DNA from: Trichoplax adhaerens
Taxonomy: Eukaryota; Animalia; Placozoa
Length of the DNA: 64,000 bases
Reading direction: 5' to 3'
NCBI RefSeq assembly: GCF_000150275.1
Contig: NW_002060944.1
Location: forward strand, 2,332,152 to 2,396,151
The notes under the pieces: model-generated
What the model was told of the DNA's origin: nothing
What the model saw: only the letters and a program-made list of their open reading frames with translations
Database searches by the model: none
Part shown: positions 5,670 to 54,788 of the stretch, piece by piece
Layout: each line of letters begins with the position of its first letter
Position numbering within the stretch: position 1 is the stretch's first letter
Made by a program: the position numbers and the translations under genes

Positions 5670-6641
5670 TTATCTTTGACTTTTGTTAAACCGATTTTCT
5701 ATTAGTAAGATGATTATCGGATTGATGCAAGAACCAAGGGTTGCAAAAATAATAACTGTTAACTTGGACCAATACGGTAATGGAGTAAAGATAGAGTGAA
5801 TAGTAACCCATAAATAATAAGGAGTTTTTGTGACGAAATAGGTCAACACTATGATAATTTCAATTTTAGCAAATTTACGCTGAGGAAGCCATCTGTTGAA
5901 GGATCCTAAAATGATAGCCACAGCTGGTCTAAATCGCATAAACTTGAAGAATATATAAGAGTAGCAAAATATAAAAAAGAGCAACGGAAGTATAAAAAAG
6001 AGAGCAATTTGTAGTCCGTAAAATCCTGTTTTAAGAGATAGAGATGGCCAGGCTTCATCGCAACCGAATTCTGTTACAGTTAAATTATCGTTTAATTTTC
6101 GAACATTAGTTGAAAATACTAAATAGATCAAATTGTAGAACATAACCATGATCCAGACCATAATTATCATAACTAAACTCTGAGTCCGGTAGAAGTATTC
6201 CCTTTCTTGACTCAAGTCATGAATACGTCTCGAACTAATTTGATAAAAATATTTACTGCATATGCGATATCGGTTGTAAGTTATAAAAGAAATCGCCAAA
6301 ATTTCAGTTTGAAGCGAAACATTTAATAAATAAGTATTAAATTTACACCCTATACTTCCAGATGTTCCGTAAATACTAATGAAAACTCCAATAGCCGTGT
6401 TTACCAAGATTAGCAATAGATCTGATATAGTTAAATTAAAATAAAATAAGTCTCTTTTCCAAAATGATTTTTTCTTTAACCAAAAACTTTTGCATACTAA
6501 GAAACAACAGAAGGTTCCGTGGAAGAAAGTAAATGCATATATGAGGCAAAATATCATTATGATCATTGGATTTTTGAATATGCAACCTTCTGCATATGGT
6601 AAGGATAATCGACTACAAAATGACTGTGATATCGAATTCAT
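5670..6641 (-). CDS. Divergent class A GPCR, intronless, 323 aa
   Basis: NLTISD (TM2), GCK, NRY in place of DRY, CDEAWP in ECL2, FFILP (TM5), NPIII in place of NPxxY; same strand and general architecture as the neighbouring GPCR. Confidence 0.85.
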   Translation of the reverse strand: MNSISQSFCSRLSLPYAEGCIFKNPMIIMIFCLIYAFTFFHGTFCCFLVCKSFWLKKKSFWKRDLFYFNLTISDLLLILVNTAIGVFISIYGTSGSIGCKFNTYLLNVSLQTEILAISFITYNRYRICSKYFYQISSRRIHDLSQEREYFYRTQSLVMIIMVWIMVMFYNLIYLVFSTNVRKLNDNLTVTEFGCDEAWPSLSLKTGFYGLQIALFFILPLLFFIFCYSYIFFKFMRFRPAVAIILGSFNRWLPQRKFAKIEIIIVLTYFVTKTPYYLWVTIHSIFTPLPYWSKLTVIIFATLGSCINPIIILLIENRFNKSQR

Positions 6642-8783: not shown

Positions 8784-8886
8784 CATGAGTCAATGACCAT
8801 CACCTTACTTTCATACTATCACCAGAATTAGTCATTAAATTACAGTAGCGGTTGAAGACTTGCTATCGCTGTCAAGGCAACAAGAA

Positions 8887-11800
8887 ATGTCGGAAGAAAC
8901 TGTGACCGAGCAAACGCATCTCTTAAAAGATGGTGCGATACCGTACTCTGATGAGAATAAGAACAGCATCAGTGACAACGACTTTACTACTCGTTCTAGT
9001 AGCAACAATACTGTTCCGTTCAGGATCAAAGTTATCGTTTTATGCATTTTGTTAACGGAATTATGTGAACGGCTGACCTATTATAGCGTTTCTGCTAATC
9101 TCGTACTTTTTGCAAATACCCACCTTGGTTTTACTAATCCTGAGGCTGCCTCCATAAATTTTATCTTCACTGGTACAGGCTATGCCATACCTATAATTAG
9201 CGGATACATCGCAGATTCCTTTATTGGGCAATATAATACTATTTTCGGCAGCAGTTTAATTTATATTGTTGGTTCTGTGGCACTGGTGTTAGTTGCAGCC
9301 CCGTATGATTTACCGTTTTCCACTAGTGCTCAATCAGCTTTTTATATAGGCGGTCTCGCATTTATTGCAATTGGCACTGGAGGTACGATTCTGTTTGTAT
9401 CATACTTATATTGCATTACTTAGCACGATAATGCCGATATGTTAAATGGTGCTGTTAACAGACTTAATTAATTTTACACAAGTATCGCATGAGGTGCTTT
9501 AACTAGCTATCAGACAATTACAGTACATTGTCATTCTTTATCAAGAATAAATTGTTATTAACAACTGTATTAGAAAGATACAGATTAATTTTCGACCTTA
9601 GGTCATACTGTACAATGCCAAATTGAAACTGTTTTAAATGTGAAAGTTAATTATATCATTGTAATTATGTATCATACACAGCACAGTATATGACATCATT
9701 TGGTAACATTTTTAAGGCCTATTTATTAACTATAAGTGAAGATGCTGCACTACGTTAATTTTACCAGTGTCTGGAAGGTGATATTTCCCCGATATCATTA
9801 CCTGAATTTGCAAGAATTGTTTTTGCGCTATTATTATTAAAACTATAGATTGCATAGTAGTATCCTACGGGTAGAGGATTATTACAGTTATCTGCACGGT
9901 TTTTAAAGTCATACAACGTATGAATATCTAGAACTTACGTAAGATACAACCATGACTAGCTTTGCTAAGCAACATTAGATAGAATTTTTAAAATGGGTGA
10001 TTATTGAATCTTGCGAATATCACTGTAAACGCTATATTTAAACAATGTTATATCCTATTCAAAAACACTAAAAGTTATCGGTTTTTATGTGCTTACAGGA
10101 ATCAAATCTAATGTTTCTCCTTTTGGTGCCGATCAATTGAAAGATTCTGGTCCTCTTCTTATTCAGCGTTTTTTTTCGTGGTTCTACTTCTTTATTAACG
10201 TAGGATCGTTGGTATCGTTTACTGCTGTCGCTTACATTCAGCAGAATGTCAGCTTCTTTTATGGATATATGATCCCTGCTATTTCTATGGCATTAGCTAT
10301 CATAATATTTATTTCTGCCCGAAGTTATTATGTAGTACGCTCTCCGAGTATGTGTTCAAAAAATTAGTATCTGGTAGTAGTAGATCAACTTCATGAAAGT
10401 ACTCTTTTATTTGTTGCATTGCACAGTACAATAATCATACACATGTAACTGTAGCACAGTGTAATAAATTTTGGACCTTGATTCAATATTGAATGTTGTG
10501 GTATAGACACATTGAAGTCAAATACTCTTAAACTAAATTTTTAGAGGGATCATTGTTGATTGACGCCGTTCGTATGATGTGGCAAGGTCTCAGGGTTAAA
10601 CTATGCTGTAGAAATGCTGGAGCTAGGAACGGGAGGATTACTAGCATTTTCGATTATGCAAAACAAGAAAACGGTGGAAGTTTCGAATCTAGTCAAGTTG
10701 AGAAGATAAAGCCCTTGGGACGTGTGATTCCTGTATTTATTTTAATCATTCTATACTGGACGGTTTATTTTCAGGTAAGAATGATGATATTAATAATGAA
10801 ACAGTCAATTGTTAAATTTTCTTAGATCTTGTGACTTTCATGAGATAATGGGTCTCAAAAACATTGCTTACTGTTACTGCCCTATGAAACTTAAAATATT
10901 GTAAGAAATTTTCGCATGTACTTTGGATGCTAATAGGCGTTACGTTATTTAGATAAATATTGATATAATTGGACGCAATTTAGATACTAGAAGAATATAT
11001 GGTTCGAATTATACTATCTGTTGAGATCAAAGTTTATAATGCGTTGTTGCATGGCATAACTGTAAAATTCCTAATTTAGATGCAGACAACATGGTTTATA
11101 CAAGGGGAATCCATGAACCTAAAACTGGGAAGTTTTAAGTTACCTGCAGCAGCGTTATCTTCATTTGATACTGTCTCCGTCCTTGTCTTTATACCTATAA
11201 TAAACTATGGTGTATATCCGCTCTATAAAAAAATCTTTGGTAGGTCACTTACCCAACTTCAAAGAATAGGTGAGATTTTGTCTAGTAAAAGTATGTGCAC
11301 TTGAATTATTTGTTTACAAAGAGAGTTTATTAATATTTAATTAATATGCAAAAATTATGAATGTAATATTTAGGTATTGGAATGATATTTGCCTCACTAG
11401 CAATGTTAGCTGCTGGTATTTTAGAAGGATATAGATTAATAGATGTGCATGAAAATCCATTACCCCAAGTTGTTGCTGGATCAACATTTAACGCATCTGG
11501 AAACATTAGTGTTTTGGCACAGATACCTCAGTTCGCTTTAATTGGACTTAGCGAAGTTTTTACGAGCATCACTGGTACTGCTAAATCTCACTATGTAACT
11601 GTTTCATAAATAAATTGTAAAAAAAATTCGTAAATTCATATGCCTTGCATTGTTGTTTCGTAAATTTTGAAAAAGGGTTGGAGTATGCATATTCGGAGGC
11701 TCCAGAAGAGCTTAAAGGATTGATCATGGGATTATATTTACTTACATCTGGGCTTGGAAGCTATCTTGGATCACTGATAATAGTCATTGTAAATGCTGCA

Positions 11801-47644: not shown

Positions 47645-49061
47645 TTAATTTATGCGATAATTTTCATGTAATTCTGGTTTGATATCGTAGAGCAAGGATA
47701 GGACGCGATCTATTACTTTATTTTTATTTGCAGCAGCGAGACGATTTTGATCATTGATTTTTTGATGGGTCTGATCTTTAATTTTGATGGCAAAATCATC
47801 CTTTGATCCGGAACTCTGGAATGCAAATAATATAATTATAATGACAATGTAACTCCTCAATACTCATCTTTATCTTCATGTCTCAACTGTGTAAATGGCA
47901 ATATATATTCTAATAACGATATAACCATCAACGAGAACTAGCGTGTAACTTTAAATAGGAAAACATGACAGAGTTGAACATAAAAATATCTATTCTAAAT
48001 TGGACTGAGCGCTATGCAAGAGAAATGCATGAAACTGCAAAGCAGTTAATTTATGATTTTAATATTTGCAACGAAAGCGTAAATCGTAAATGTTAGAGTT
48101 TGCGAATTTTATCTCTATATTTGCCATTTTCTAATGTGACACTAGTAACTTAGTTAATAATTATAAGCAGACAATATTGCGATAAACACCCGTTTAAAAT
48201 ATTATATTTAAAATATGTTAATGCTAATAATTCTTATTACTAACAGCCTAAAGGTGAGTTATACTTTATTTGTTAAACAATCATTACTTTCAAATACATG
48301 AAACTGGATGATGCATTTATTATTCAACCCGCAGTAAAGTATTCATAAGTTATTCTCATCAGTGAAGTTGTTAGAGTGAGTAATCTTGGGCTTCAATTAT
48401 ACTGCAGGAGCTAGAGAGATGTGATGCACTAAGCGTAACAAATGTTTCTATAGCATTATCAAAATCCGATATTATCAGGAAATAGAACCAAAGTTTGATA
48501 ATGCTGGTGGCCTATTTAAATATTAGGCTTAATTCACGCTTAAAACAGCGGAATACTTGGTTTTCTGATGTTATAGTGCTCAAGAACTCACCTCTTTCAC
48601 TTTAGCTTGAAATTCTTGCTCACGTTGAACTTTAAATTTTTCTATTTCAGATTGTGCTTCCTCTTTCGCCTGCTTTAATCTTCTCGTCTTTCCTAAAGGT
48701 TGACATCAACAAAGAAAGCACTACCATTATTTAAAATAAATTGCCACACTATCGATTTCATAAGCTTAATAATAAATTTACGATTTAATAGATATCTAGC
48801 CTAGTAATTTGGTAACACGAGTTCTACAAACGACATAATATATACGCGTATAAAGTATATCGAAGTCCATGATTTGACATATGCCTTATTTTGCCTCGAA
48901 AATTTTAAACTTAACCATTCCAGCATTTTAGTACTTGGGCATAATAAAACCTTAAAGGTGTACCTGTTTAGTTACTTACGTTTCTTTGCGTCATTTACAA
49001 GTTCACTAGCCTTTTTTTCAGCTTGTAAAAGTTGCTGAATCCCTTCACTTTTAGACGCCAT
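47645..49061 (-). CDS. ATP6V1G: V-type ATPase subunit G, 117 aa; exons 49061-48980, 48692-48592, 47815-47645
   Basis: MASKSEGIQQLLQAEKKASELVNDAKKR|KTRRLKQAKEEAQSEIEKFKVQREQEF...|SSGS...YDIKPELHENYRIN. Confidence 0.96.
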
Positions 49062-49129
49062 ATTGCCAGTAATGCAATAATTACGAATGTGACTTCGAAA
49101 GGGATTCGACTGCCTTTTGCGATGGATTT

Positions 49130-49725
49130 ATACGGTACTGTACCGTACCGAACAGTTATTGCATTGGTTATTACATTTTTCTCGACATCTGTTATAGTTT
49201 ACAAATTCATACTACCGTACTAGACTGTATTACTGTATTACTGTATCGACGCAACAGATAGATATACCGCAAGACTAATCGATTATACAGTACTAGTAAA
49301 CGTCCTGTGACTTAGTGTGTAAAGGCACGTGACAATCGATGTCATAACATATTTCATACTGTACTGTACAGTACAGTACATTGTACACAGATACTGTACA
49401 CTGTAGTGCTGTACTGTACTGTACAGTACACTTCGCCGTCTGAGTCTTCTGTACTACTGTACTGTACAGTACAGGGTACATTGTACAGTACAGTACAGTA
49501 CTAAGAGAAAACCTCGTGAGTGAGCTGCATACAGTACTGTACAGTACAGTACAGTATTGTACACTGTACAGTACTAAGAGAAAACCTTGTGAGTGAGCTG
49601 CATATCAGTACAGTACAGTACAGTACTGTACAGTACACACTGTACGGTAAAATTAGTTGTACTGTACAGTACAGTGTACAGTACAGTACTGTTATTGATA
49701 CTGTACAGTTATGCTCAGTACAGCA
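49130..49725. promoter_or_regulatory. ACAGT pentamer array; probable bidirectional promoter for ATP6V1G and the snoRNA host gene
   Basis: One of the densest pentamer blocks in the window; contains a duplicated ~40 bp unit (gtactaagagaaaaccTYgtgagtgagctgcata) near 49498 and 49571. Promoter role inferred from position. Confidence 0.65.
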
Positions 49726-50150
49726 ATGACATCTGCGATCATATGACCTCTTGACAGAGCATGGTCAAAGCTTGGTCACTAATTTTAAAAGTACGCGTGC
49801 TTCCAAACTAAACTGTCATTCAGCGTCTTCAAAATTAATCGAAATTGCGAGAATTCTCTCCGGCAATGCATCGTGCGATATCGGTCGTTATAAATCCTCA
49901 TCAAATCTATACGATGCTAATGCATTATACGTAAAAAGGTAATCTGTCAGTATTATACAATTTTTATTAAGTATGCAAACTTTTACGTAACTATTTTAGC
50001 TGCTTCCTGGAGTAGGGTATCCGTTCAATTTGAACGAGGTCCTTCTTTGGTTTACCACTTTAGATAAATTCTTGTAAATTCTTTAATTTTTTTGTTTTTC
50101 ATTTATCATGATTAGTCGTATTTGCAGTATACAGTATTATACTGATGTAG

Positions 50151-50278
50151 AGCGTAAATGATGATGGAAATGTTACAACTGAATATCAGTACGTGCTTGT
50201 AACTTGTACAATGTACACTGTAATGTCTTGATGATAGTTGTGTACAATGTCAATCTTTCGCTCCTATCTGAAAACGTT
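50151..50278 (+). ncRNA. SNORD80: Box C/D snoRNA, U80/snR60-like (28S G in the AUAGGGGCGAAAGA helix)
   Basis: C box ATGATGA 50158, D' CTGA 50179, C' TGATGA 50229, D CTGA 50268. Guide TCTTTCGCTCCTAT-CTGA is the same as the recalled human U80 3' guide. Confidence 0.85.
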
Positions 50279-50519
50279 TATCTTTAGCTCATCAGTTTCT
50301 TGTTAATCATGTAATAATGAGAATAGCCGTATTTAAAAACGGATTATTTTGGTATTCTAATTTGAAAATATTTCTTGCTAGCCTAAGCAGAATGAGCTGG
50401 CGTGATCTTTGGTCTTTGCACTTTTAATTTGGTAGACGTGATGGGACCGTGCCGGTAATAAACTTTCTGAAATCTCTTAATTTGATTGAATCGATTGAAA
50501 ATAGTAAGATAGTTATGGA

Positions 50520-50596
50520 AAAGAATGATGACAGCATATTTGCTACTCATGATGGCTCAGATGACGAAATCATTAGCCACCAAGATCTCTGAACCT
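50520..50596 (+). ncRNA. SNORD76: Box C/D snoRNA, U76/U24-like double guide (28S AGAUCUUGGUGGUAGUAGCAAAUAU)
   Basis: C box ATGATGA 50525; guide ATATTTGCTACT before D' ATGA 50549; C' ATGACGA 50561; guide GCCACCAAGATCT before D CTGA 50589. Confidence 0.9.
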
Positions 50597-51122
50597 AAAA
50601 TGAAAATCTTCGAAATTTTCTTTGCAACCGCATGCGCCTTTTTCACTATTCTTGAGTGTAGCAAGAATTGTTAAGGCTAATTACAGTATCGCAATGCAAA
50701 TTACCATAAAATTCAATTTTTGGGGAAGGACTGCTTTATGATTGCAAATCTCTAGATATGCTTCGTACAAGTTTATTATGCATACTGTATTGCATGATTA
50801 AGCCTGATAAATTTTTTTTTTCAGTTAATAATGTTGCCGAGTTAATACAACCAGTTGCATTGACGTTACTACTGCATCGTGTAATTAAACGTCCATTATA
50901 ATATTTTTATTTTGGGTTATACTGACTCATGATTATTATACGTGTAACATTTATTTATCTAGTGAGCCATTTATGAATCCACCTCTAGCTGGTCACATTT
51001 GAAATTCTCGAAACATCAAGAGAAAGCGCTAAAAATGAAGACCTATAAATCATGATGAGAATTATGAACAGGTAACTTACTCACGCGTCTAGTCAGTACT
51101 TAGATACGAAATTTTATAGAGG

Positions 51123-51215
51123 TAGAAAAGTCAAAATGATGATAATTTTGAAGGCATAGTTCAATCTGAGTTTTATAGTGACAGAGAATTTCACTCCACT
51201 CTGACTTCTTTTCTA
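51123..51215 (+). ncRNA. SNORD77: Box C/D snoRNA, U77/snR60-like (28S UGAACUAUGCC)
   Basis: C box ATGATGA 51136; guide GGCATAGTTCA before D' CTGA 51166; D CTGA 51201; terminal stem tagaaaag/cttttcta. Confidence 0.85.
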
Positions 51216-51407
51216 TATTAAATTAAGTTTACTAGTTAGGCAGTTGATGTATTGGAGTTAATTTGAAAATATTGATCTAGCACATTATATATTGATACTC
51301 CTGCTACCATGGAACTGGACCTATTCAAGCATGGTCAATTCCCAGCAAAACAGGTATCACTGCTTATAGTTACTTTTTGAATACGGTACAGCAAGAATCT
51401 GATCTAT

Positions 51408-51498
51408 ACAATCACAGGATGATAATATCATGATGGGAATCTCTCAGAATTATTTAACGTGAAGATAATTATTTTCTTCGAAACTGAATTGTGATTGT
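51408..51498 (+). ncRNA. SNORD79: Box C/D snoRNA, U79-like (28S GAGAUUCCCA)
   Basis: Variant C box AGGATGA 51416; guide GATGGGAATCTCT (as in recalled human U79) before D' CAGA 51445; C' GTGAAGA 51459; D CTGA 51484; perfect 9 bp terminal stem acaatcaca/tgtgattgt. Confidence 0.85.
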
Positions 51499-51736
51499 CA
51501 TTTTAGCTTCTAGTCTTTATTTATGTCTAGATTCGCTAACTTCTAAACATAAGTGAAGTAAATTTTACGCTTTACGTGAGCTATGATCTTTTATCTCCAT
51601 TATTATATGCACTTAGGTCTATCAACAATTGGAAGGAGAACTTAATTGTACGGTACCTACTGCGGCAAAGCCAATTTAGACAAGCAAGGTATTAATGCAA
51701 TCGATGAATAAGACTAGCTTGTTACAATTATTTAGA

Positions 51737-51827
51737 TGCACAAGATGAAAAAGATTAGGGACATCTGAATATGTATAAATATTATACATAAATCATGAAT
51801 GTTTTGGAAATCGATAGGCCTGACGCA
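51737..51827 (+). ncRNA. SNORD74: Box C/D snoRNA, U74/snR64-like (28S UGUCCCUA)
   Basis: Variant C box AAGATGA 51742; TAGGGACAT-CTGA (D' 51765) as in recalled human U74; internal hairpin tatgtata/tatacata; D CTGA 51820. Confidence 0.72.
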
Positions 51828-52132
51828 CTAATTATATAATTATTTTCTGACTGCTACGGTTAGAATATAAAATAATTTAATGCAAATTCTGTAACTATTT
51901 TATTTTGGTCAAGAATTTCATTAGAGCAAGAGACTGCTTTTAATGCAGTCAGATATGGTCTCCCTTTTTGTCTTCGCTGTCAAGATTGATTATTTTTGAA
52001 CTGTTAAGTTGGACTCCTCGATTTTCCTAATTAGATGTAATAAGGTAATTTCGTTACGAGTAACTCTCGTGACTCCTGTTGTGCTAAGTGTGTACGATGA
52101 AACTCCCGCTTAGTTATTCTATATGTAATCGC

Positions 52133-52216
52133 TATTATCAATGATGACGAAGATTGCTATAGTTATCCCTGTCAGAATATGACTAAATGTTGATATCACG
52201 TCAGTCTGAGACAATA
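52133..52216 (+). ncRNA. SNORD1: Box C/D snoRNA, snR38/SNORD1-like (28S ACAGGGAUAACU)
   Basis: C box ATGATGA 52141; guide TAGTTATCCCTGT before D' CAGA 52173; D CTGA 52206; terminal stem tattatc/gacaata. Confidence 0.87.
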
Positions 52217-54788
52217 AATGTCTTATTTATAATCATACCTTTCAAGGATTTTGTATTCTCCTAAACTTTACGTAAACGTATTTTGTCTTAGGTTTACCTG
52301 GCATGGTAGCGTAAAATTTCATGATTGCATTTATTTGGTATCGTTACGTCTGTCTAAGGATTGAAATGTATGTACAGTACTACTGATTAACCTTGGCATA
52401 ATATACAAGATTTATTAGAAATACTGCAGCTCCCGATTGTTTGTAAATTATCATGAGTACAGTATATAAGTTGAGGCTACTACCATAACTAGTTTTTAGA
52501 TATATTTTACCTATTAATTTTCCCTATATTTTAGATATAACCAAATCATTTATACTCTGCAGGAATTGGTATGGTATAGGTGACGATAGAACTCCTTATG
52601 CTGCCTAGAACCTTTCACTGTTCAGATTCCAGTCTGAACATGTCTAATTCTGCCTTGGCAATGATCGCTTTCTGATAATATATCAACGTTAAAAAGTTCT
52701 GAATAATATTTCGCAGTAAATATACAGTATTGTACTAAATCAGTTATAAATAATAAAGTCATCAATTTAATTGCGTAATGATGTAAACTTTGTTTCAAAA
52801 TCTTTAAACGGCGTTAGTGATGCCATGTTATGCTGTGTACATGTTACCTATATACGCGTATTGCGTATAATCATGAGTATGGCAGCAGTCTTGGTTAACC
52901 GGGCGACTGCATTGAATAAATAAGATCTTGAGCCGCACATCGAATGTTATAAAGCGTGTACGTATTAGTATTGCGTTAGAATAGATTAAGGATATAAATA
53001 TTATTGTACTATTCTCATACACCGACGTTAGAGTGTACTACAGCCCATTATGTGAATATACAGTATGATTACACGATATTTTGGTGTATTCATTAGTTGG
53101 TGGAGTTAACGGACGGGCGTTCGATTGTTTAATTATTAAGCTTAGTTACTGTGAACATAACCTCTAACACAGGCGCTTCAGTGTCTTCAGTCGTACATGA
53201 TGAGTATGTGCTATTTCTATAATTACATATTTCACCGTATGCTTGCGACTTATAAAGTCTCGTTTGCACACTCAATAGGTTGTTAGCGTTTGCCATAGTC
53301 CTTTGGTCAACATAATTTTACTGTACTGTATACTGTAATTCCTTTACGCCTTATCAGCGAGCTCTGTAAAATTTTTACTCCGAAGTAAAATTCAGGCGTT
53401 GAAGGATAATTCAGTTTAGTATATTTTATACATGTAAATACATGTAAACCGTGTGAAAGGGAGTTTTCATGTCTCTGTGGTTAAGTGAATTAACTGCATT
53501 ACTGTGATGCAACAACTGAAGTAAGTGGTCATGATTCTGTAAACAGTAGAGCAGGCTGCCTGTCTATACAATTTTACAAAGTACCTAGAACTACAGTGAA
53601 GTTCTGTATCCGAACTTTTCTTGCATGCTGTGGATTTCCATAGTAAAATGGTCTGTATTTATCTTACACTACCATACGCATGTTAATTCATCTAATTTTT
53701 ATGAAAGCCTGCTCTTGATGGCAGTTTTTCTCTAAATTTCGATTTTTAGATTCTCGTCCCCTATTTCTAGGCGTATTTGAGCGTTACTTGTACTTAGCCA
53801 CAATAATGTTATAATTTTGTCATTAGAGTAAACGATAAGATAAACTGAGATTAGACTATCGTAGAGAATTGAAGAGATGATGTCGGAGTTTCATGGCAAT
53901 AAACGTATGATTACGAACGTACTGTAATTTACCGTATATCTTCTGCGCTGAGATACGGTAATGGCAACGTCTACCATCGCTTCTCCGATAGTACTGAAGT
54001 CAAGTGCTTACGTAGAGTACAGTACATCGTCATCACGATAAGAAAGACCGAAATAAATTTATAAAGATAGTACTGTAATAAGAAATGCAGCTAAATAAAA
54101 GGTCATCATGGACTACTAAATCTTGGCGTAGAAGATTTTAGTTCTCCATGGTCAATTGGTCATGCTTTAAACTGTATACTTAGTTGTATGCATGTCTGAG
54201 AAACAATATTGTACGTACTGTATATCGGAGCGTAAAAGATAGTGAATGACGAACTCCCAATATCTTATACGTACGTGTACTGTACTGTACAGTGTACACT
54301 GTGTTACGGTCAATCCCGGGAATCGGTCATAGTGCGATGCAAAGCAGTACGCAATATATTAAACCGTCTGGATAAGATGCCCAGTGTACGACCGCAGTAC
54401 AGTACAGTCAATCTGCAAGTCTTTCTGAAAATATTTTATACCTTTAGATTCATGTTTCATTTACCGTTCTTCACGGCTTTGGCAACTTCTGAAACAAACG
54501 GTTTCTCTAATCAAATCCAGACCGTGCACATTTCATACGTTCGATGTTTCCGATACTAAACTACTGCTTTTAATTGTTTTATCTGTAATGATAAAATTAT
54601 TACGTGGCTCTTTAACTTCTGAATGTCTAGTGTTTTATCTAATATTCTAGCTGACGGTACACTCCGTTCGTAAGCTGGTACATGTGATTGTGACATACCA
54701 GAATGCTGTATCAGACTACATAAAAAGAGCATACTCACACGGCTTACAAAAATTTTATATTGCAGAGCTCTCGATGCAGCATTAACTT

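What the first reader, a model, noticed from the sequence alone, without database searches (positions are those of the whole stretch)
49730..52775. GAS5-like non-coding host gene with six intronic box C/D snoRNAs in an early-branching animal
Seen in sequence: a 3 kb ORF-less region with short exons and six C/D-box units, one per intron. Each carries an 8-14 nt element complementary to conserved 28S rRNA just upstream of a D or D' box; where an acceptor is clear, the D box sits about 70-80 nt upstream of it. From recalled sequences: five guides match snoRNAs that vertebrates encode together in GAS5 (U80, U76, U77, U79, U74), and the sixth matches snR38/SNORD1. Inference: five GAS5-type snoRNAs in a single non-coding host suggests a GAS5 orthologue predating the bilaterian-placozoan split, recognisable only by its intronic cargo. 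A protein-centred annotation would leave this region blank. Single snoRNAs here may already be catalogued; the host-level equivalence is the claim.
Basis: partly seen in the sequence, partly recalled or inferred. Interest (0 to 1): 0.92.

Follow-up and report, generated by a model that had tools for sequence, protein, structure and literature searches.

The report
Placozoan non-coding host of six snoRNAs
A spliced, non-coding gene in a Trichoplax-sized genome carries one rRNA-methylation guide snoRNA in each of six introns; most of its cargo matches that of the vertebrate GAS5 gene, so GAS5-type host genes may be very old, but that is not proven.

Summary
On the + strand, six box C/D snoRNAs sit one per intron in an 8-exon spliced transcript (about 49796-52930). 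It has no ORF over 56 aa. GT..AG splice junctions appear in contigs of three runs from three studies.

Rfam places two units above its gathering score: SNORD24 and snoR38. Guides pair with the genome's own 28S over 10-14 bp (8 bp for one), in the register needed to methylate known conserved sites.

The GAS5-orthologue reading is partly supported. "Five GAS5 snoRNAs" reduces to three ancient families:
- snR60/U80, duplicated independently here.
- U24/U76. This single gene is Rfam SNORD24 and was already published as Trichoplax "U76".
- U74 plus U79, which form one double-guide snoRNA in plant-type contigs.

The sixth unit, snR38, is not GAS5 cargo by recall. New support:
- Roquin and DARS2, which flank mouse Gas5, lie on the same 9.7-Mb scaffold, 1.4 and 2.1 Mb away.
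- A second Trichoplax locus groups SNHG1-type guides (U25, U27, U29-type).

Intermediate lineages could not be searched. I put common descent with GAS5 at about 0.5. An earlier scan note on other DNA of this genome (s1-759550) described the SNHG1-like locus.

The parts
49796..49938 (+). Exon 1. The 5' end is the start of the spliced contig; the true TSS is not mapped. A short CTTCC tract lies at 49800-49804.
   Evidence: X5 record 10 starts at 49796 and continues into exons 2-4. Donor AAAAAG|GTAATC.
49939..50381 (+). Intron 1 (443 nt, GT..AG), holding u1.
   Evidence: Inferred: the 400-nt X5 contig equals E1+E2+E3+E4, and the left side of the 50454|50963 joint is 74 nt. Splice consensus.
50151..50278 (+). 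u1, a snR60/Z15 (U80-type) box C/D snoRNA. C box 50158-50164, D' box 50179-50182 (its guide has decayed), C' box 50229-50234, D guide 50254-50267, D box 50268-50271. Terminal stem AGCGU/ACGUU. Predicted target Gm1006 of the LSU.
   Evidence: Rfam snosnR60_Z15, 22.1 bits, with an identical UCUUUCGCUCCUAUCUGA. 14-bp duplex with LSU 1002-1015.
50382..50454 (+). Exon 2 (73 nt).
   Evidence: Joint 50454|50963 in X5 and X6.
50455..50962 (+). Intron 2 (508 nt), holding u2. Its 3' part is long: 370 nt lie between the D box and the acceptor.
   Evidence: GT..AG joint skipping 508 nt in X5 and X6. Also present unspliced in X5 and X7 contigs covering 50441-50988.
50522..50596 (+). u2, a SNORD24 (U24/U76-type) snoRNA. 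C box 50525-50531, D' guide 50536-50547, D' box ATGA 50549-50552, D guide 50576-50588, D box 50589-50592. Predicted targets Cm1535 and Am1547.
   Evidence: Rfam SNORD24, 48.0 bits, above the gathering score of 41. 13-bp and 12-bp duplexes. It is the only SNORD24 hit in the genome. It corresponds to the published Trichoplax 'U76', target 28S A1549 (PMC2655684).
50963..51071 (+). Exon 3 (109 nt).
   Evidence: Joints on both sides.
51072..51280 (+). Intron 3 (209 nt), holding u3.
   Evidence: GT..AG joint in X5, X6 and X7.
51125..51213 (+). u3, a snR60/Z15 (U77-like use) snoRNA. Stem GAAAAG/CUUUUC, C box 51136-51142, D' guide 51152-51163, D' box 51166-51169, D box 51201-51204. The D guide is a decayed copy of the u1 D guide. 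Predicted target Am914.
   Evidence: Rfam snosnR60_Z15, 32.8 bits, the best hit for that family in the genome. 12-bp duplex with LSU 912-923.
51281..51353 (+). Exon 4 (73 nt).
   Evidence: Joints.
51354..51616 (+). Intron 4 (263 nt), holding u4.
   Evidence: GT..AG joint in X5, X6 and X7.
51410..51496 (+). u4, a SNORD79-type snoRNA. 7-bp stem AAUCACA/UGUGAUU, C box AUGAUAA 51419-51425, D' guide 51434-51443, D' box CAGA 51445-51448, C' box 51460-51466, D box 51484-51487. Predicted target Am2431.
   Evidence: Rfam SNORD79, 24.2 bits, below the gathering score of 47. The guide GAUGGGAAUCUCUC is identical to the family consensus. 10-bp duplex with LSU 2428-2437.
51617..51688 (+). Exon 5 (72 nt).
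   Evidence: Joints.
51689..51913 (+). Intron 5 (225 nt), holding u5.
   Evidence: GT..AG joint in X5, X6 and X7.
51737..51827 (+). u5, a SNORD74-type snoRNA. C box AAGAUGA 51742-51748, D' guide 51756-51763, D' box 51765-51768, C' box 51795-51801, D guide 51810-51819, D box 51820-51823. The terminal stem is only 3 bp. Predicted targets Cm2442 (weak) and Am2860.
   Evidence: Rfam SNORD74, 18.6 bits (E 0.038 in 119 nt), sharing UAGGGACAUCUGA with the consensus. 8 bp plus 3 bp with LSU 2439-2449, and 10 bp with LSU 2856-2865. The D guide weakly resembles Drosophila snoMe28S-A3420.
51914..52044 (+). Exon 6 (131 nt).
   Evidence: X7 record 28 and X6 record 21.
52045..52291 (+). Intron 6 (247 nt), holding u6.
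   Evidence: Inferred from the lengths of X7 record 28 and X5 record 15, plus GTAATT..AG.
52133..52216 (+). u6, a snoR38/snR38 (SNORD1-type) snoRNA. Stem UAUUAUC/GACAAUA, C box 52141-52147, D' guide 52160-52172, D' box CAGA 52173-52176, D box 52206-52209. Predicted target Gm2917.
   Evidence: Rfam snoR38, 48.9 bits, above the gathering score of 45. 13-bp duplex with LSU 2913-2925.
52292..52367 (+). Exon 7. The donor is probably GTATGT at 52368; the alternative is GTATCG at 52338.
   Evidence: The spliced contigs of X5, X6 and X7 still cover 52342 (table 3)..
52368..52562 (+). Intron 7, with no snoRNA found.
   Evidence: No Rfam hit of note and no box-adjacent rRNA duplex. The acceptor at 52562|52563 comes from X5 record 15 and X6 record 23.
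52563..52930 (+). Exon 8, the last exon. AATAAA at 52752 and 52915; contigs end at 52928-52932.

Best explanation
This is a non-coding snoRNA host gene that works like vertebrate GAS5.

Mechanism. A + strand transcript of about 3.1 kb is spliced into a roughly 1-kb RNA with no meaningful ORF; this is shown. Each of its first six introns carries one box C/D snoRNA; this is shown. The following steps are inferred from established snoRNA biology. After splicing, the intron is debranched and trimmed by exonucleases down to the snoRNA, which is protected by the core proteins on its C/D kink-turn. The snoRNPs then guide fibrillarin to 2'-O-methylate 28S rRNA.

Predicted target sites, counted from base 1 of the LSU match in L001:
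- A914 and G1006 (snR60 sites).
- C1535 and A1547 (U24/U76 sites).
- A2431 (U79 site).
- C2442 (U74 site, weak duplex).
- A2860.
- G2917 (snR38 site).

The exons are carriers only. In the variants listed, they vary between placozoan samples about as fast as intron spacer.

Evolutionary reading (inference, about 0.5). The linkage of snR60/U80-type, U24/U76-type and U74/U79-type guides in one non-coding host is inherited from the host that became vertebrate GAS5. Cargo was later lost, gained and duplicated on both sides.
For: Mechanism:
- Two Rfam hits reach the gathering score. For the other four units, the best or second-best family shares the diagnostic guide.
- Guide-rRNA duplexes lie in the fifth-nucleotide register on the genome's own 28S.
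- There are six such duplexes against 0.27 expected by chance, all on one strand.
- GT..AG joints appear in contigs of three runs from three studies. The spliced contigs are deeper than the intronic ones: 78 against 4-15 in X5.
- The longest ORF is 56 aa, and exons 2, 3, 6 and 8 have stops in all three frames.
- Listed variants per kb: exons 9.6, intron spacer 9.8, snoRNAs 5.4. None falls in a guide or a box.

Descent:
- Three of the four ancient families here also have members in GAS5. My estimate for this by chance is 0.001-0.01 before allowing for choice among about 10 human hosts.
- The single Roquin gene (C1413, 3.77 Mb) and the DARS2-type AspRS (C1413, 4.50 Mb) share the 9.74-Mb scaffold with the host at 2.38 Mb. 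That scaffold is 9.2% of the genome.
- The mouse gene order is Rc3h1-Serpinc1-Zbtb37-Gas5-Dars2 (PMC13264541). Human GAS5 lies between DARS2 and ZBTB37 (PMC6789762).
- A second Trichoplax locus groups U27, U25/snR56 and U29-type guides, which by recall are SNHG1 cargo in humans. The sorting of guides into multi-snoRNA hosts therefore looks conserved in two separate cases.
Against: - Four of the six units are below Rfam gathering scores.
- The u5 D' duplex has only 8 contiguous bp.
- The C boxes of u4 (AUGAUAA) and u5 (AAGAUGA) are imperfect.
- Mature snoRNAs, the TSS and the methylations were not observed. Only contigs were available.

Against descent:
- snoRNAs move between hosts. U24 is in RPL5 in sponges and in RPL7A in humans.
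- Only 3 of about 8 GAS5 families are present, and the order differs.
- By recall, snR38 belongs to another human host.
- Synteny is at the megabase scale only.
- Two other markers of the mammalian neighbourhood lie on other contigs: Ribosomal_S14/MRPS14 and Torsin.
- gas5 microsynteny is not kept even between fish and mammals.
- One 3.2-kb metagenome contig with a SNORD79-like gene shows no partner guides.
Confidence: 0.55

Rival explanations
1. Lineage-specific host. The gene is a real non-coding snoRNA host that works as described, but placozoans assembled it independently by intragenic duplication and snoRNA transposition. The overlap with GAS5 cargo is chance, or reflects a general tendency to group LSU guides.
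For: - The u1/u3 duplication is clearly local and independent (PMC2653536).
- U74 and U79 could also have split independently from a double-guide ancestor like plant snoR44/J54.
- gas5-like hosts are described as hotspots of snoRNA gain.
- U24 has different hosts in sponge and human.
- Under conservative counting (two independent shared units, about 50 ancient families), the chance of the overlap is about 0.1.
- Hertel et al. found no conserved hosts for the Trichoplax snoRNAs they identified.
Against: - Three ancient families are shared with one human host.
- The host lies on the same scaffold as two flanking genes of mammalian Gas5.
- A parallel SNHG1-like grouping exists elsewhere in the genome.
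Confidence: 0.4
2. The exons encode a small protein, so the gene is a coding host whose product was missed.
For: ORFs of 56 and 51 aa exist in the spliced model. They were not searched, because they cross exon joins.
Against: - Exons 2, 3, 6 and 8 have stops in every frame.
- The first ATG opens a short ORF.
- Exons vary as fast as introns between samples.
Confidence: 0.03
3. The snoRNAs are made from their own promoters or from a polycistronic precursor cut by an RNase III-type enzyme, as in plants and yeast. They are not released from spliced introns.
For: Plant-type contigs show tandem polycistronic clusters of related snoRNAs. No small-RNA data were available here.
Against: - There is strictly one snoRNA per intron.
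- Every unit lies between mapped or consensus GT..AG sites.
- Five of the six D boxes lie 76-129 nt from the acceptor.
- The host is demonstrably spliced.
Confidence: 0.02

Closest known systems
Vertebrate GAS5, a multi-snoRNA non-coding host (U74-U81, U44, U47)
   Same: - Short exons with no coding potential and one box C/D snoRNA per intron.
- Cargo includes U80/U77-type, U79-type, U74-type and U76-like guides.
- It lies on the same scaffold as the orthologues of Rc3h1 and Dars2, which flank mouse Gas5.
   Different: - Six snoRNAs rather than ten.
- No U44-, U47-, U75-, U78- or U81-type unit was recognised.
- It carries a snR38-type unit.
- The order differs.
- u2 is a full U24-type double guide.
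- There is no microsynteny.
- Exon similarity was not compared, and TOP start and NMD behaviour were not testable.
Chicken gas5-like host gene (Shao et al. 2009, PMC2653536)
   Same: It was recognised by payload and gene structure rather than by exon sequence. Two U80-family copies sit in separate introns.
   Different: The chicken gene keeps nine human cognates in the same order and has a clear TATA box and TOP start. Here only three families are shared and the order is not kept.
Trichoplax 'U76' of Hertel et al. 2009 (PMC2655684)
   Same: By its target it is almost certainly u2: 28S A1549 in their numbering, A1547 in mine.
   Different: That paper listed it as a lone snoRNA and called host homology with GAS5 'virtually impossible to determine'. 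The other five units and the spliced host are not in that paper.
SNHG1/UHG and the SNHG1-like Trichoplax cluster at L131
   Same: The same design: clustered box C/D guides that in humans share one non-coding host.
   Different: Different cargo (U25, U27 and U29 types, targeting SSU and LSU) on another contig. Splicing at L131 was not examined.
Plant snoR44/J54/Z268 polycistronic clusters (Rfam clan CL00069)
   Same: They carry the same two guides: the U74-type AGGGACAU and the U79-type GGGAAUCUCU.
   Different: In the plant-type contigs both guides sit in one snoRNA (D' and D). The genes are tandem and polycistronic with Z267 and snoR122, not one per intron.

Membership tests
Box C/D snoRNA (methylation guide) | C box (RUGAUGA) near the 5' end and D box (CUGA) near the 3' end, brought together by a terminal stem. 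| tested here: met
   All six units have a CUGA D box. The C box is perfect in u1, u2, u3 and u6, and differs at one position in u4 (AUGAUAA) and u5 (AAGAUGA). Terminal stems are 5-7 bp in u1, u3, u4 and u6, but only 2-3 bp in u2 and u5.
Box C/D snoRNA (methylation guide) | A guide of at least 10 nt complementary to rRNA, ending at a D or D' box so that the fifth nucleotide pairs with the target. | tested here: met
   Duplexes of 10-14 bp in u1, u2 (two), u3, u4, u5 (D guide) and u6. The u5 D' guide has only 8 bp plus 3 bp. Six observed against 0.27 expected by chance.
Box C/D snoRNA (methylation guide) | Accumulation as a stable small RNA, and methylation of the target. | not testable with these tools
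   Only Logan contigs were available. No small-RNA or RiboMeth data.
Rfam SNORD24 / snoR38 | Score at or above the curated gathering score. | tested here: met
   48.0 bits against 41, and 48.9 bits against 45.
Rfam snosnR60_Z15, SNORD79, SNORD74 | Score at or above the curated gathering score. | tested here: not met
   32.8 and 22.1 bits against 41; 24.2 against 47; 18.6 against 41. The named family scores highest for u1, u3 and u4. For u5, SNORD74 has the best E-value while snoR22, a plant family with the same guide, scores 0.7 bits more. The diagnostic guides match the consensus, so functional equivalence is likely while formal membership is not shown.
   No SNORD76 hit at E up to 10 in a 481-nt search. 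The D' guide and the ATGA box do place the target at the A assigned to U76.
GAS5 orthologue | Non-coding, multi-exon, one box C/D snoRNA per intron. | tested here: met
GAS5 orthologue | Cargo set U74, U75, U76, U77, U44, U78, U79, U80, U47, U81 (list recalled; chicken counterparts). | tested here: inconclusive
   U80/U77-type (two copies), U79-type, U74-type and a U24/U76-type unit are present. No U44, U47, U75, U78 or U81 match appears in the window at gathering, in the gene at E up to 10, or within 70 kb either side at gathering. There is an extra snR38 unit.
GAS5 orthologue | Conserved neighbourhood (DARS2-GAS5-ZBTB37 in mammals). | tested here: inconclusive
   There is no microsynteny; the neighbours are a PIN_4 gene and unnamed genes. 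DARS2-type AspRS and Roquin are on the same 9.74-Mb scaffold, 2.1 and 1.4 Mb away. The S14 and Torsin probes fall elsewhere.
GAS5 orthologue | 5'-TOP transcription start. | not testable with these tools
   Contigs cannot map a TSS. Only a short CTTCC tract lies at the apparent 5' end.
GAS5 orthologue | The same host in intermediate lineages. | not testable with these tools
   No eukaryote genome collection was available. One metagenome scan gave plant-type clusters and short unplaced contigs. No paper in the held library reports GAS5 outside vertebrates.

The most novel reading that the evidence does not exclude
GAS5-type and SNHG1-type multi-snoRNA non-coding host genes both predate the placozoan-bilaterian split. 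That would make them among the oldest traceable lncRNA loci in animals. They would be recognisable only by which guide families travel together and by their linkage group, because the exons have turned over completely.
Probability: 0.4. Interest if true: 0.8.

Novelty: new member of a known kind. Interest (0 to 1): 0.6.

Why it matters
The only systematic ncRNA annotation of Trichoplax listed five box C/D RNAs (U3 plus four guide snoRNAs). It stated that host homology with GAS5 could not be judged. This locus adds five guide snoRNAs and a spliced non-coding host with RNA support.

If the cargo linkage is inherited, lncRNA host genes known only as "conserved across gnathostomes" would be several hundred million years older. 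Guide co-hosting could then serve as a marker for tracing non-coding genes whose exons do not align.

The locus also shows twice how a double-guide snoRNA duplicates and splits its two jobs: u1 and u3 here, and U74 and U79 compared with plant snoR44/J54. This mirrors U77 and U80 in mammals.

Tried and rejected
- Metagenome scan for the U79-type guide plus box. Most of the 120 loci were chance matches. Eight sites on seven loci had a C-box-like motif upstream, and six of those loci went to Rfam. L088 and L091 are plant-type snoR44/J54-Z267-snoR122 clusters. L014, L033, L066 and L126 are short unplaced contigs without partner guides. This says little about animals.
- Drosophila as an intermediate. 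The 2024 Drosophila map has no held supplements. Huang et al. 2005 is not held. Searches for Me28S-A2634, C2645 and G1083 found nothing.
- Synteny probes that failed or were negative. Siah-Interact_N (CACYBP) and CENP-L were not detected. Ribosomal_S14 and Torsin fall on other contigs.
- The upstream PIN_4 gene could not be shown to be SWT1.
- The other genome hits for snR60/Z15 (L128-L130) carry no snR60 guides.
- The SNORD29 model found nothing convincing genome-wide.
- A seventh box-adjacent duplex, at 50973 in exon 3, was rejected as chance because it has no exact 10-mer match.
- A C/D-like remnant in intron 2 (about 50738-50807; 11 bp with 2 G-U to LSU 2077) was left as unproven.
- The miRNA hits at 49350-49710 are artefacts of a palindromic TACAGTAC repeat.
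- The joined spliced model was used only in a local script to measure ORF lengths. It was not sent to any search, so its 56- and 51-aa ORFs remain unsearched.

Full report
**Source.** The genome has 105.6 Mb in 1414 contigs. The window is C1413:2,332,152-2,396,151. That size matches the published Trichoplax adhaerens assembly, and u2 matches the Trichoplax "U76" of Hertel et al. by its target.

- SNORD24 at 50522-50596 (48.0 bits).
- snoR38 at 52133-52216 (48.9 bits).

A permissive scan adds four further hits:
- snR60/Z15 at 51131-51212 (32.8 bits).
- snR60/Z15 at 50149-50280 (22.1 bits).
- SNORD79 at 51413-51488 (24.2 bits).
- SNORD74 at 51731-51779 (18.6 bits).

These four are below threshold, but the alignments show the diagnostic guide plus box preserved:
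- UCUUUCGCUCCUAUCUGA in u1.
- GCAUAGUUCA in u3.
- GAUGGGAAUCUCUC in u4.
- UAGGGACAUCUGA in u5.

I took the genome's own rRNA genes and searched for antiparallel duplexes ending at a D or D' box.
- u1 pairs over 14 bp, predicting Gm1006.
- u2 pairs over 13 bp (Cm1535) and 12 bp (Am1547, with ATGA as D' box).
- u3 pairs over 12 bp (Am914).
- u4 pairs over 10 bp (Am2431).
- u5 pairs over 10 bp (Am2860), and over 8 bp plus 3 bp (Cm2442).
- u6 pairs over 13 bp (Gm2917).

The offsets to recalled yeast sites are constant. They are 97-98 for A817, G908, C1437 and A1449, and 102 for G2815, which fits homologous positions. Six box-adjacent duplexes of at least 12 bp lie on the + strand of the gene. Shuffles give 0.27 on average, and the - strand has none.

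**The host transcript.** Contigs of four runs were laid on 48700-54600.
- X1 covers everything evenly and looks like DNA.
- X5, X6 and X7 come from three studies, and X7 is on record as RNA-Seq. They show GT..AG joints on the + strand at 50454|50963, 51071|51281, 51353|51617 and 51688|51914.
- Spliced contigs are deeper than intron-containing ones (78 against 4-15 in X5).

Contig lengths and consensus sites fix the remaining introns. The model has eight exons:
- 49796-49938
- 50382-50454
- 50963-51071
- 51281-51353
- 51617-51688
- 51914-52044
- 52292-52367 (or -52337)
- 52563 to about 52930, with AATAAA at 52915

Each of introns 1-6 holds one snoRNA. Intron 7 holds none. The D box lies 110, 370, 76, 129, 90 and 82 nt from the acceptor in introns 1-6. 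The spliced model is about 1.0 kb. Its longest ATG ORF is 56 aa, and exons 2, 3, 6 and 8 have stops in all frames. The joined model was examined only locally and was not searched against any database.

Among the variants listed between samples, exons (9.6 per kb) vary like intron spacer (9.8 per kb). The snoRNAs vary less (5.4 per kb), with no variant in a guide or a box. The numbers are small and the list is incomplete.

**What each unit is.**
- u1 and u3 are paralogues of the snR60/Z15 double guide. u1 keeps the D guide and has a decayed D' guide with a 4-nt deletion and a 37-nt insert. u3 keeps the D' guide, and its D guide is a mutated copy of u1's. Shao et al. concluded that mammalian U77 arose from U80 within vertebrates. 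This duplication and division of labour is therefore a parallel event, not shared ancestry of "U77" and "U80".
- u2 is the only SNORD24-type gene the genome search found. It gives no SNORD76 hit. It carries the U24 D guide and a D' guide whose ATGA box places the methyl group on the A assigned to U76, so it is the undivided ancestor type. Hertel et al. already listed it as Trichoplax U76. The same family sits in RPL5 in sponges and in RPL7A in humans.
- u4 and u5 belong to one Rfam clan (CL00069). In plant-type metagenome contigs a single snoR44/J54 snoRNA carries the U74-type guide at D' and the U79-type guide at D. U74 and U79 are therefore daughters of one double guide.
- u5 has a second guide, which weakly resembles Drosophila snoMe28S-A3420.
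- u6 is a clear snR38/SNORD1 type. By recall, that family belongs to another human host.

**Is it a GAS5 orthologue?** The independent cargo overlap is 3 of 4 ancient families. With 50-100 ancient C/D families and 8 in GAS5, the chance of at least 3 in 4 is roughly 0.01-0.001. Allowing for about ten candidate human hosts weakens this tenfold. If U24 is discounted and only two units are counted, the chance approaches 0.1.

I added two tests. The first is synteny.
- Mouse Gas5 lies in the order Rc3h1-Serpinc1-Zbtb37-Gas5-Dars2-Cenpl. Human GAS5 lies between DARS2 and ZBTB37.
- In this genome the single Roquin ROQ_II match is at C1413:3,765,882.
- The bacterial-type AspRS (DARS2 type) is at C1413:4.496-4.499 Mb.
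- Both are on the host's scaffold, which is 9.74 Mb, or 9.2% of the genome.
- Ribosomal_S14 and Torsin probes fall elsewhere. CACYBP and CENP-L were not detected.
- This is macrosynteny at 1.4-2.1 Mb, not microsynteny. gas5 microsynteny is already lost between fish and mammals.

The second test followed an earlier scan note (s1-759550).
- I found SNORD27 (40.7 bits) at C1411:5,611,446.
- A snR56/U25-clan hit lies 180 nt upstream of it.
- The same 1.2 kb also holds a 13-bp guide to LSU 3116, which I recall as the U29 site, and a fourth unit with an 11-bp guide to SSU 1313.
- By recall, U25, U27 and U29 share SNHG1 in humans.

Two Trichoplax clusters thus each mirror a different human non-coding host, with no mixing between them. 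That is hard to get from random assortment.

**Against orthology.**
- snoRNA mobility is well documented.
- Only a minority of GAS5 cargo is present, and the order differs.
- No other Rfam-level snoRNA lies within 70 kb on either side.
- No intermediate lineage could be checked.
- In the held library GAS5 is traced only across gnathostomes. No paper reports it outside vertebrates.

**Verdict.** Descent from the same ancestral host as GAS5 is plausible, at about 0.5. The rival is independent assembly, at about 0.4. The locus is a new member of a known kind. One of its six snoRNAs was already published.

Noticed in passing
L131:780-1930 (G000:C1411:5,610,700-5,611,900, + strand): A second snoRNA cluster. 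It holds a unit with a 13-bp guide to LSU 3116 (U29-type by recall), a snR56/U25-clan hit at 1244-1320 (31 bits; 12-bp guide to SSU 1412), SNORD27 at 1501-1575 (40.7 bits; 12-bp guide to SSU 28), and a fourth C/D-like unit near 1850-1930 with an 11-bp guide to SSU 1313. The cargo resembles human SNHG1. Splicing was not examined.
   Followed up: partly
window:49350-49710: Palindromic TACAGTAC-type repeat blocks lie just upstream of the host gene. Depth is very high in X1 (up to about 47,000), with many chimeric joints, so this is a highly dispersed repeat. It produces spurious Rfam miRNA hits on both strands.
   Followed up: no
window:44415-45901 (- strand): A PIN_4-domain gene is transcribed divergently from the host, with about 3.9 kb between the starts. 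It may be SWT1-like, which would be a further 1q25-region marker by recall, but the family could not be resolved beyond the PIN domain.
   Followed up: partly
L088:10485-11331 and L091:576-1868 (metagenome contigs): Plant-type polycistronic clusters of Z267, snoR44/J54 (two copies) and snoR122. In L091, one snoR44/J54 gene carries both the U74-type (AGGGACAUCAGA) and U79-type (GGGAAUCUCUCUGA) guides.
   Followed up: partly
window:51810-51823: The D guide of u5 predicts Am2860 in GGCCUA*UCGAU. I do not know this as a yeast or human site. It weakly resembles the D guide of Drosophila snoMe28S-A3420 (16.6 bits).
   Followed up: partly
window:50597-50962: The 3' part of intron 2 is unusually long. 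It contains a possible alternative acceptor (T-run then CAG at about 50813-50824) and a degenerate C/D-like remnant at about 50738-50807. An unspliced contig spans the whole intron in X5 and X7.
   Followed up: no
window:1741-2811 and 5670-6641 (- strand): Two intronless rhodopsin-family GPCR ORFs (7tm_1, E 1.8e-44 and 4.6e-20) lie in tandem. A POT-family fragment is at 8860-9423.
   Followed up: no
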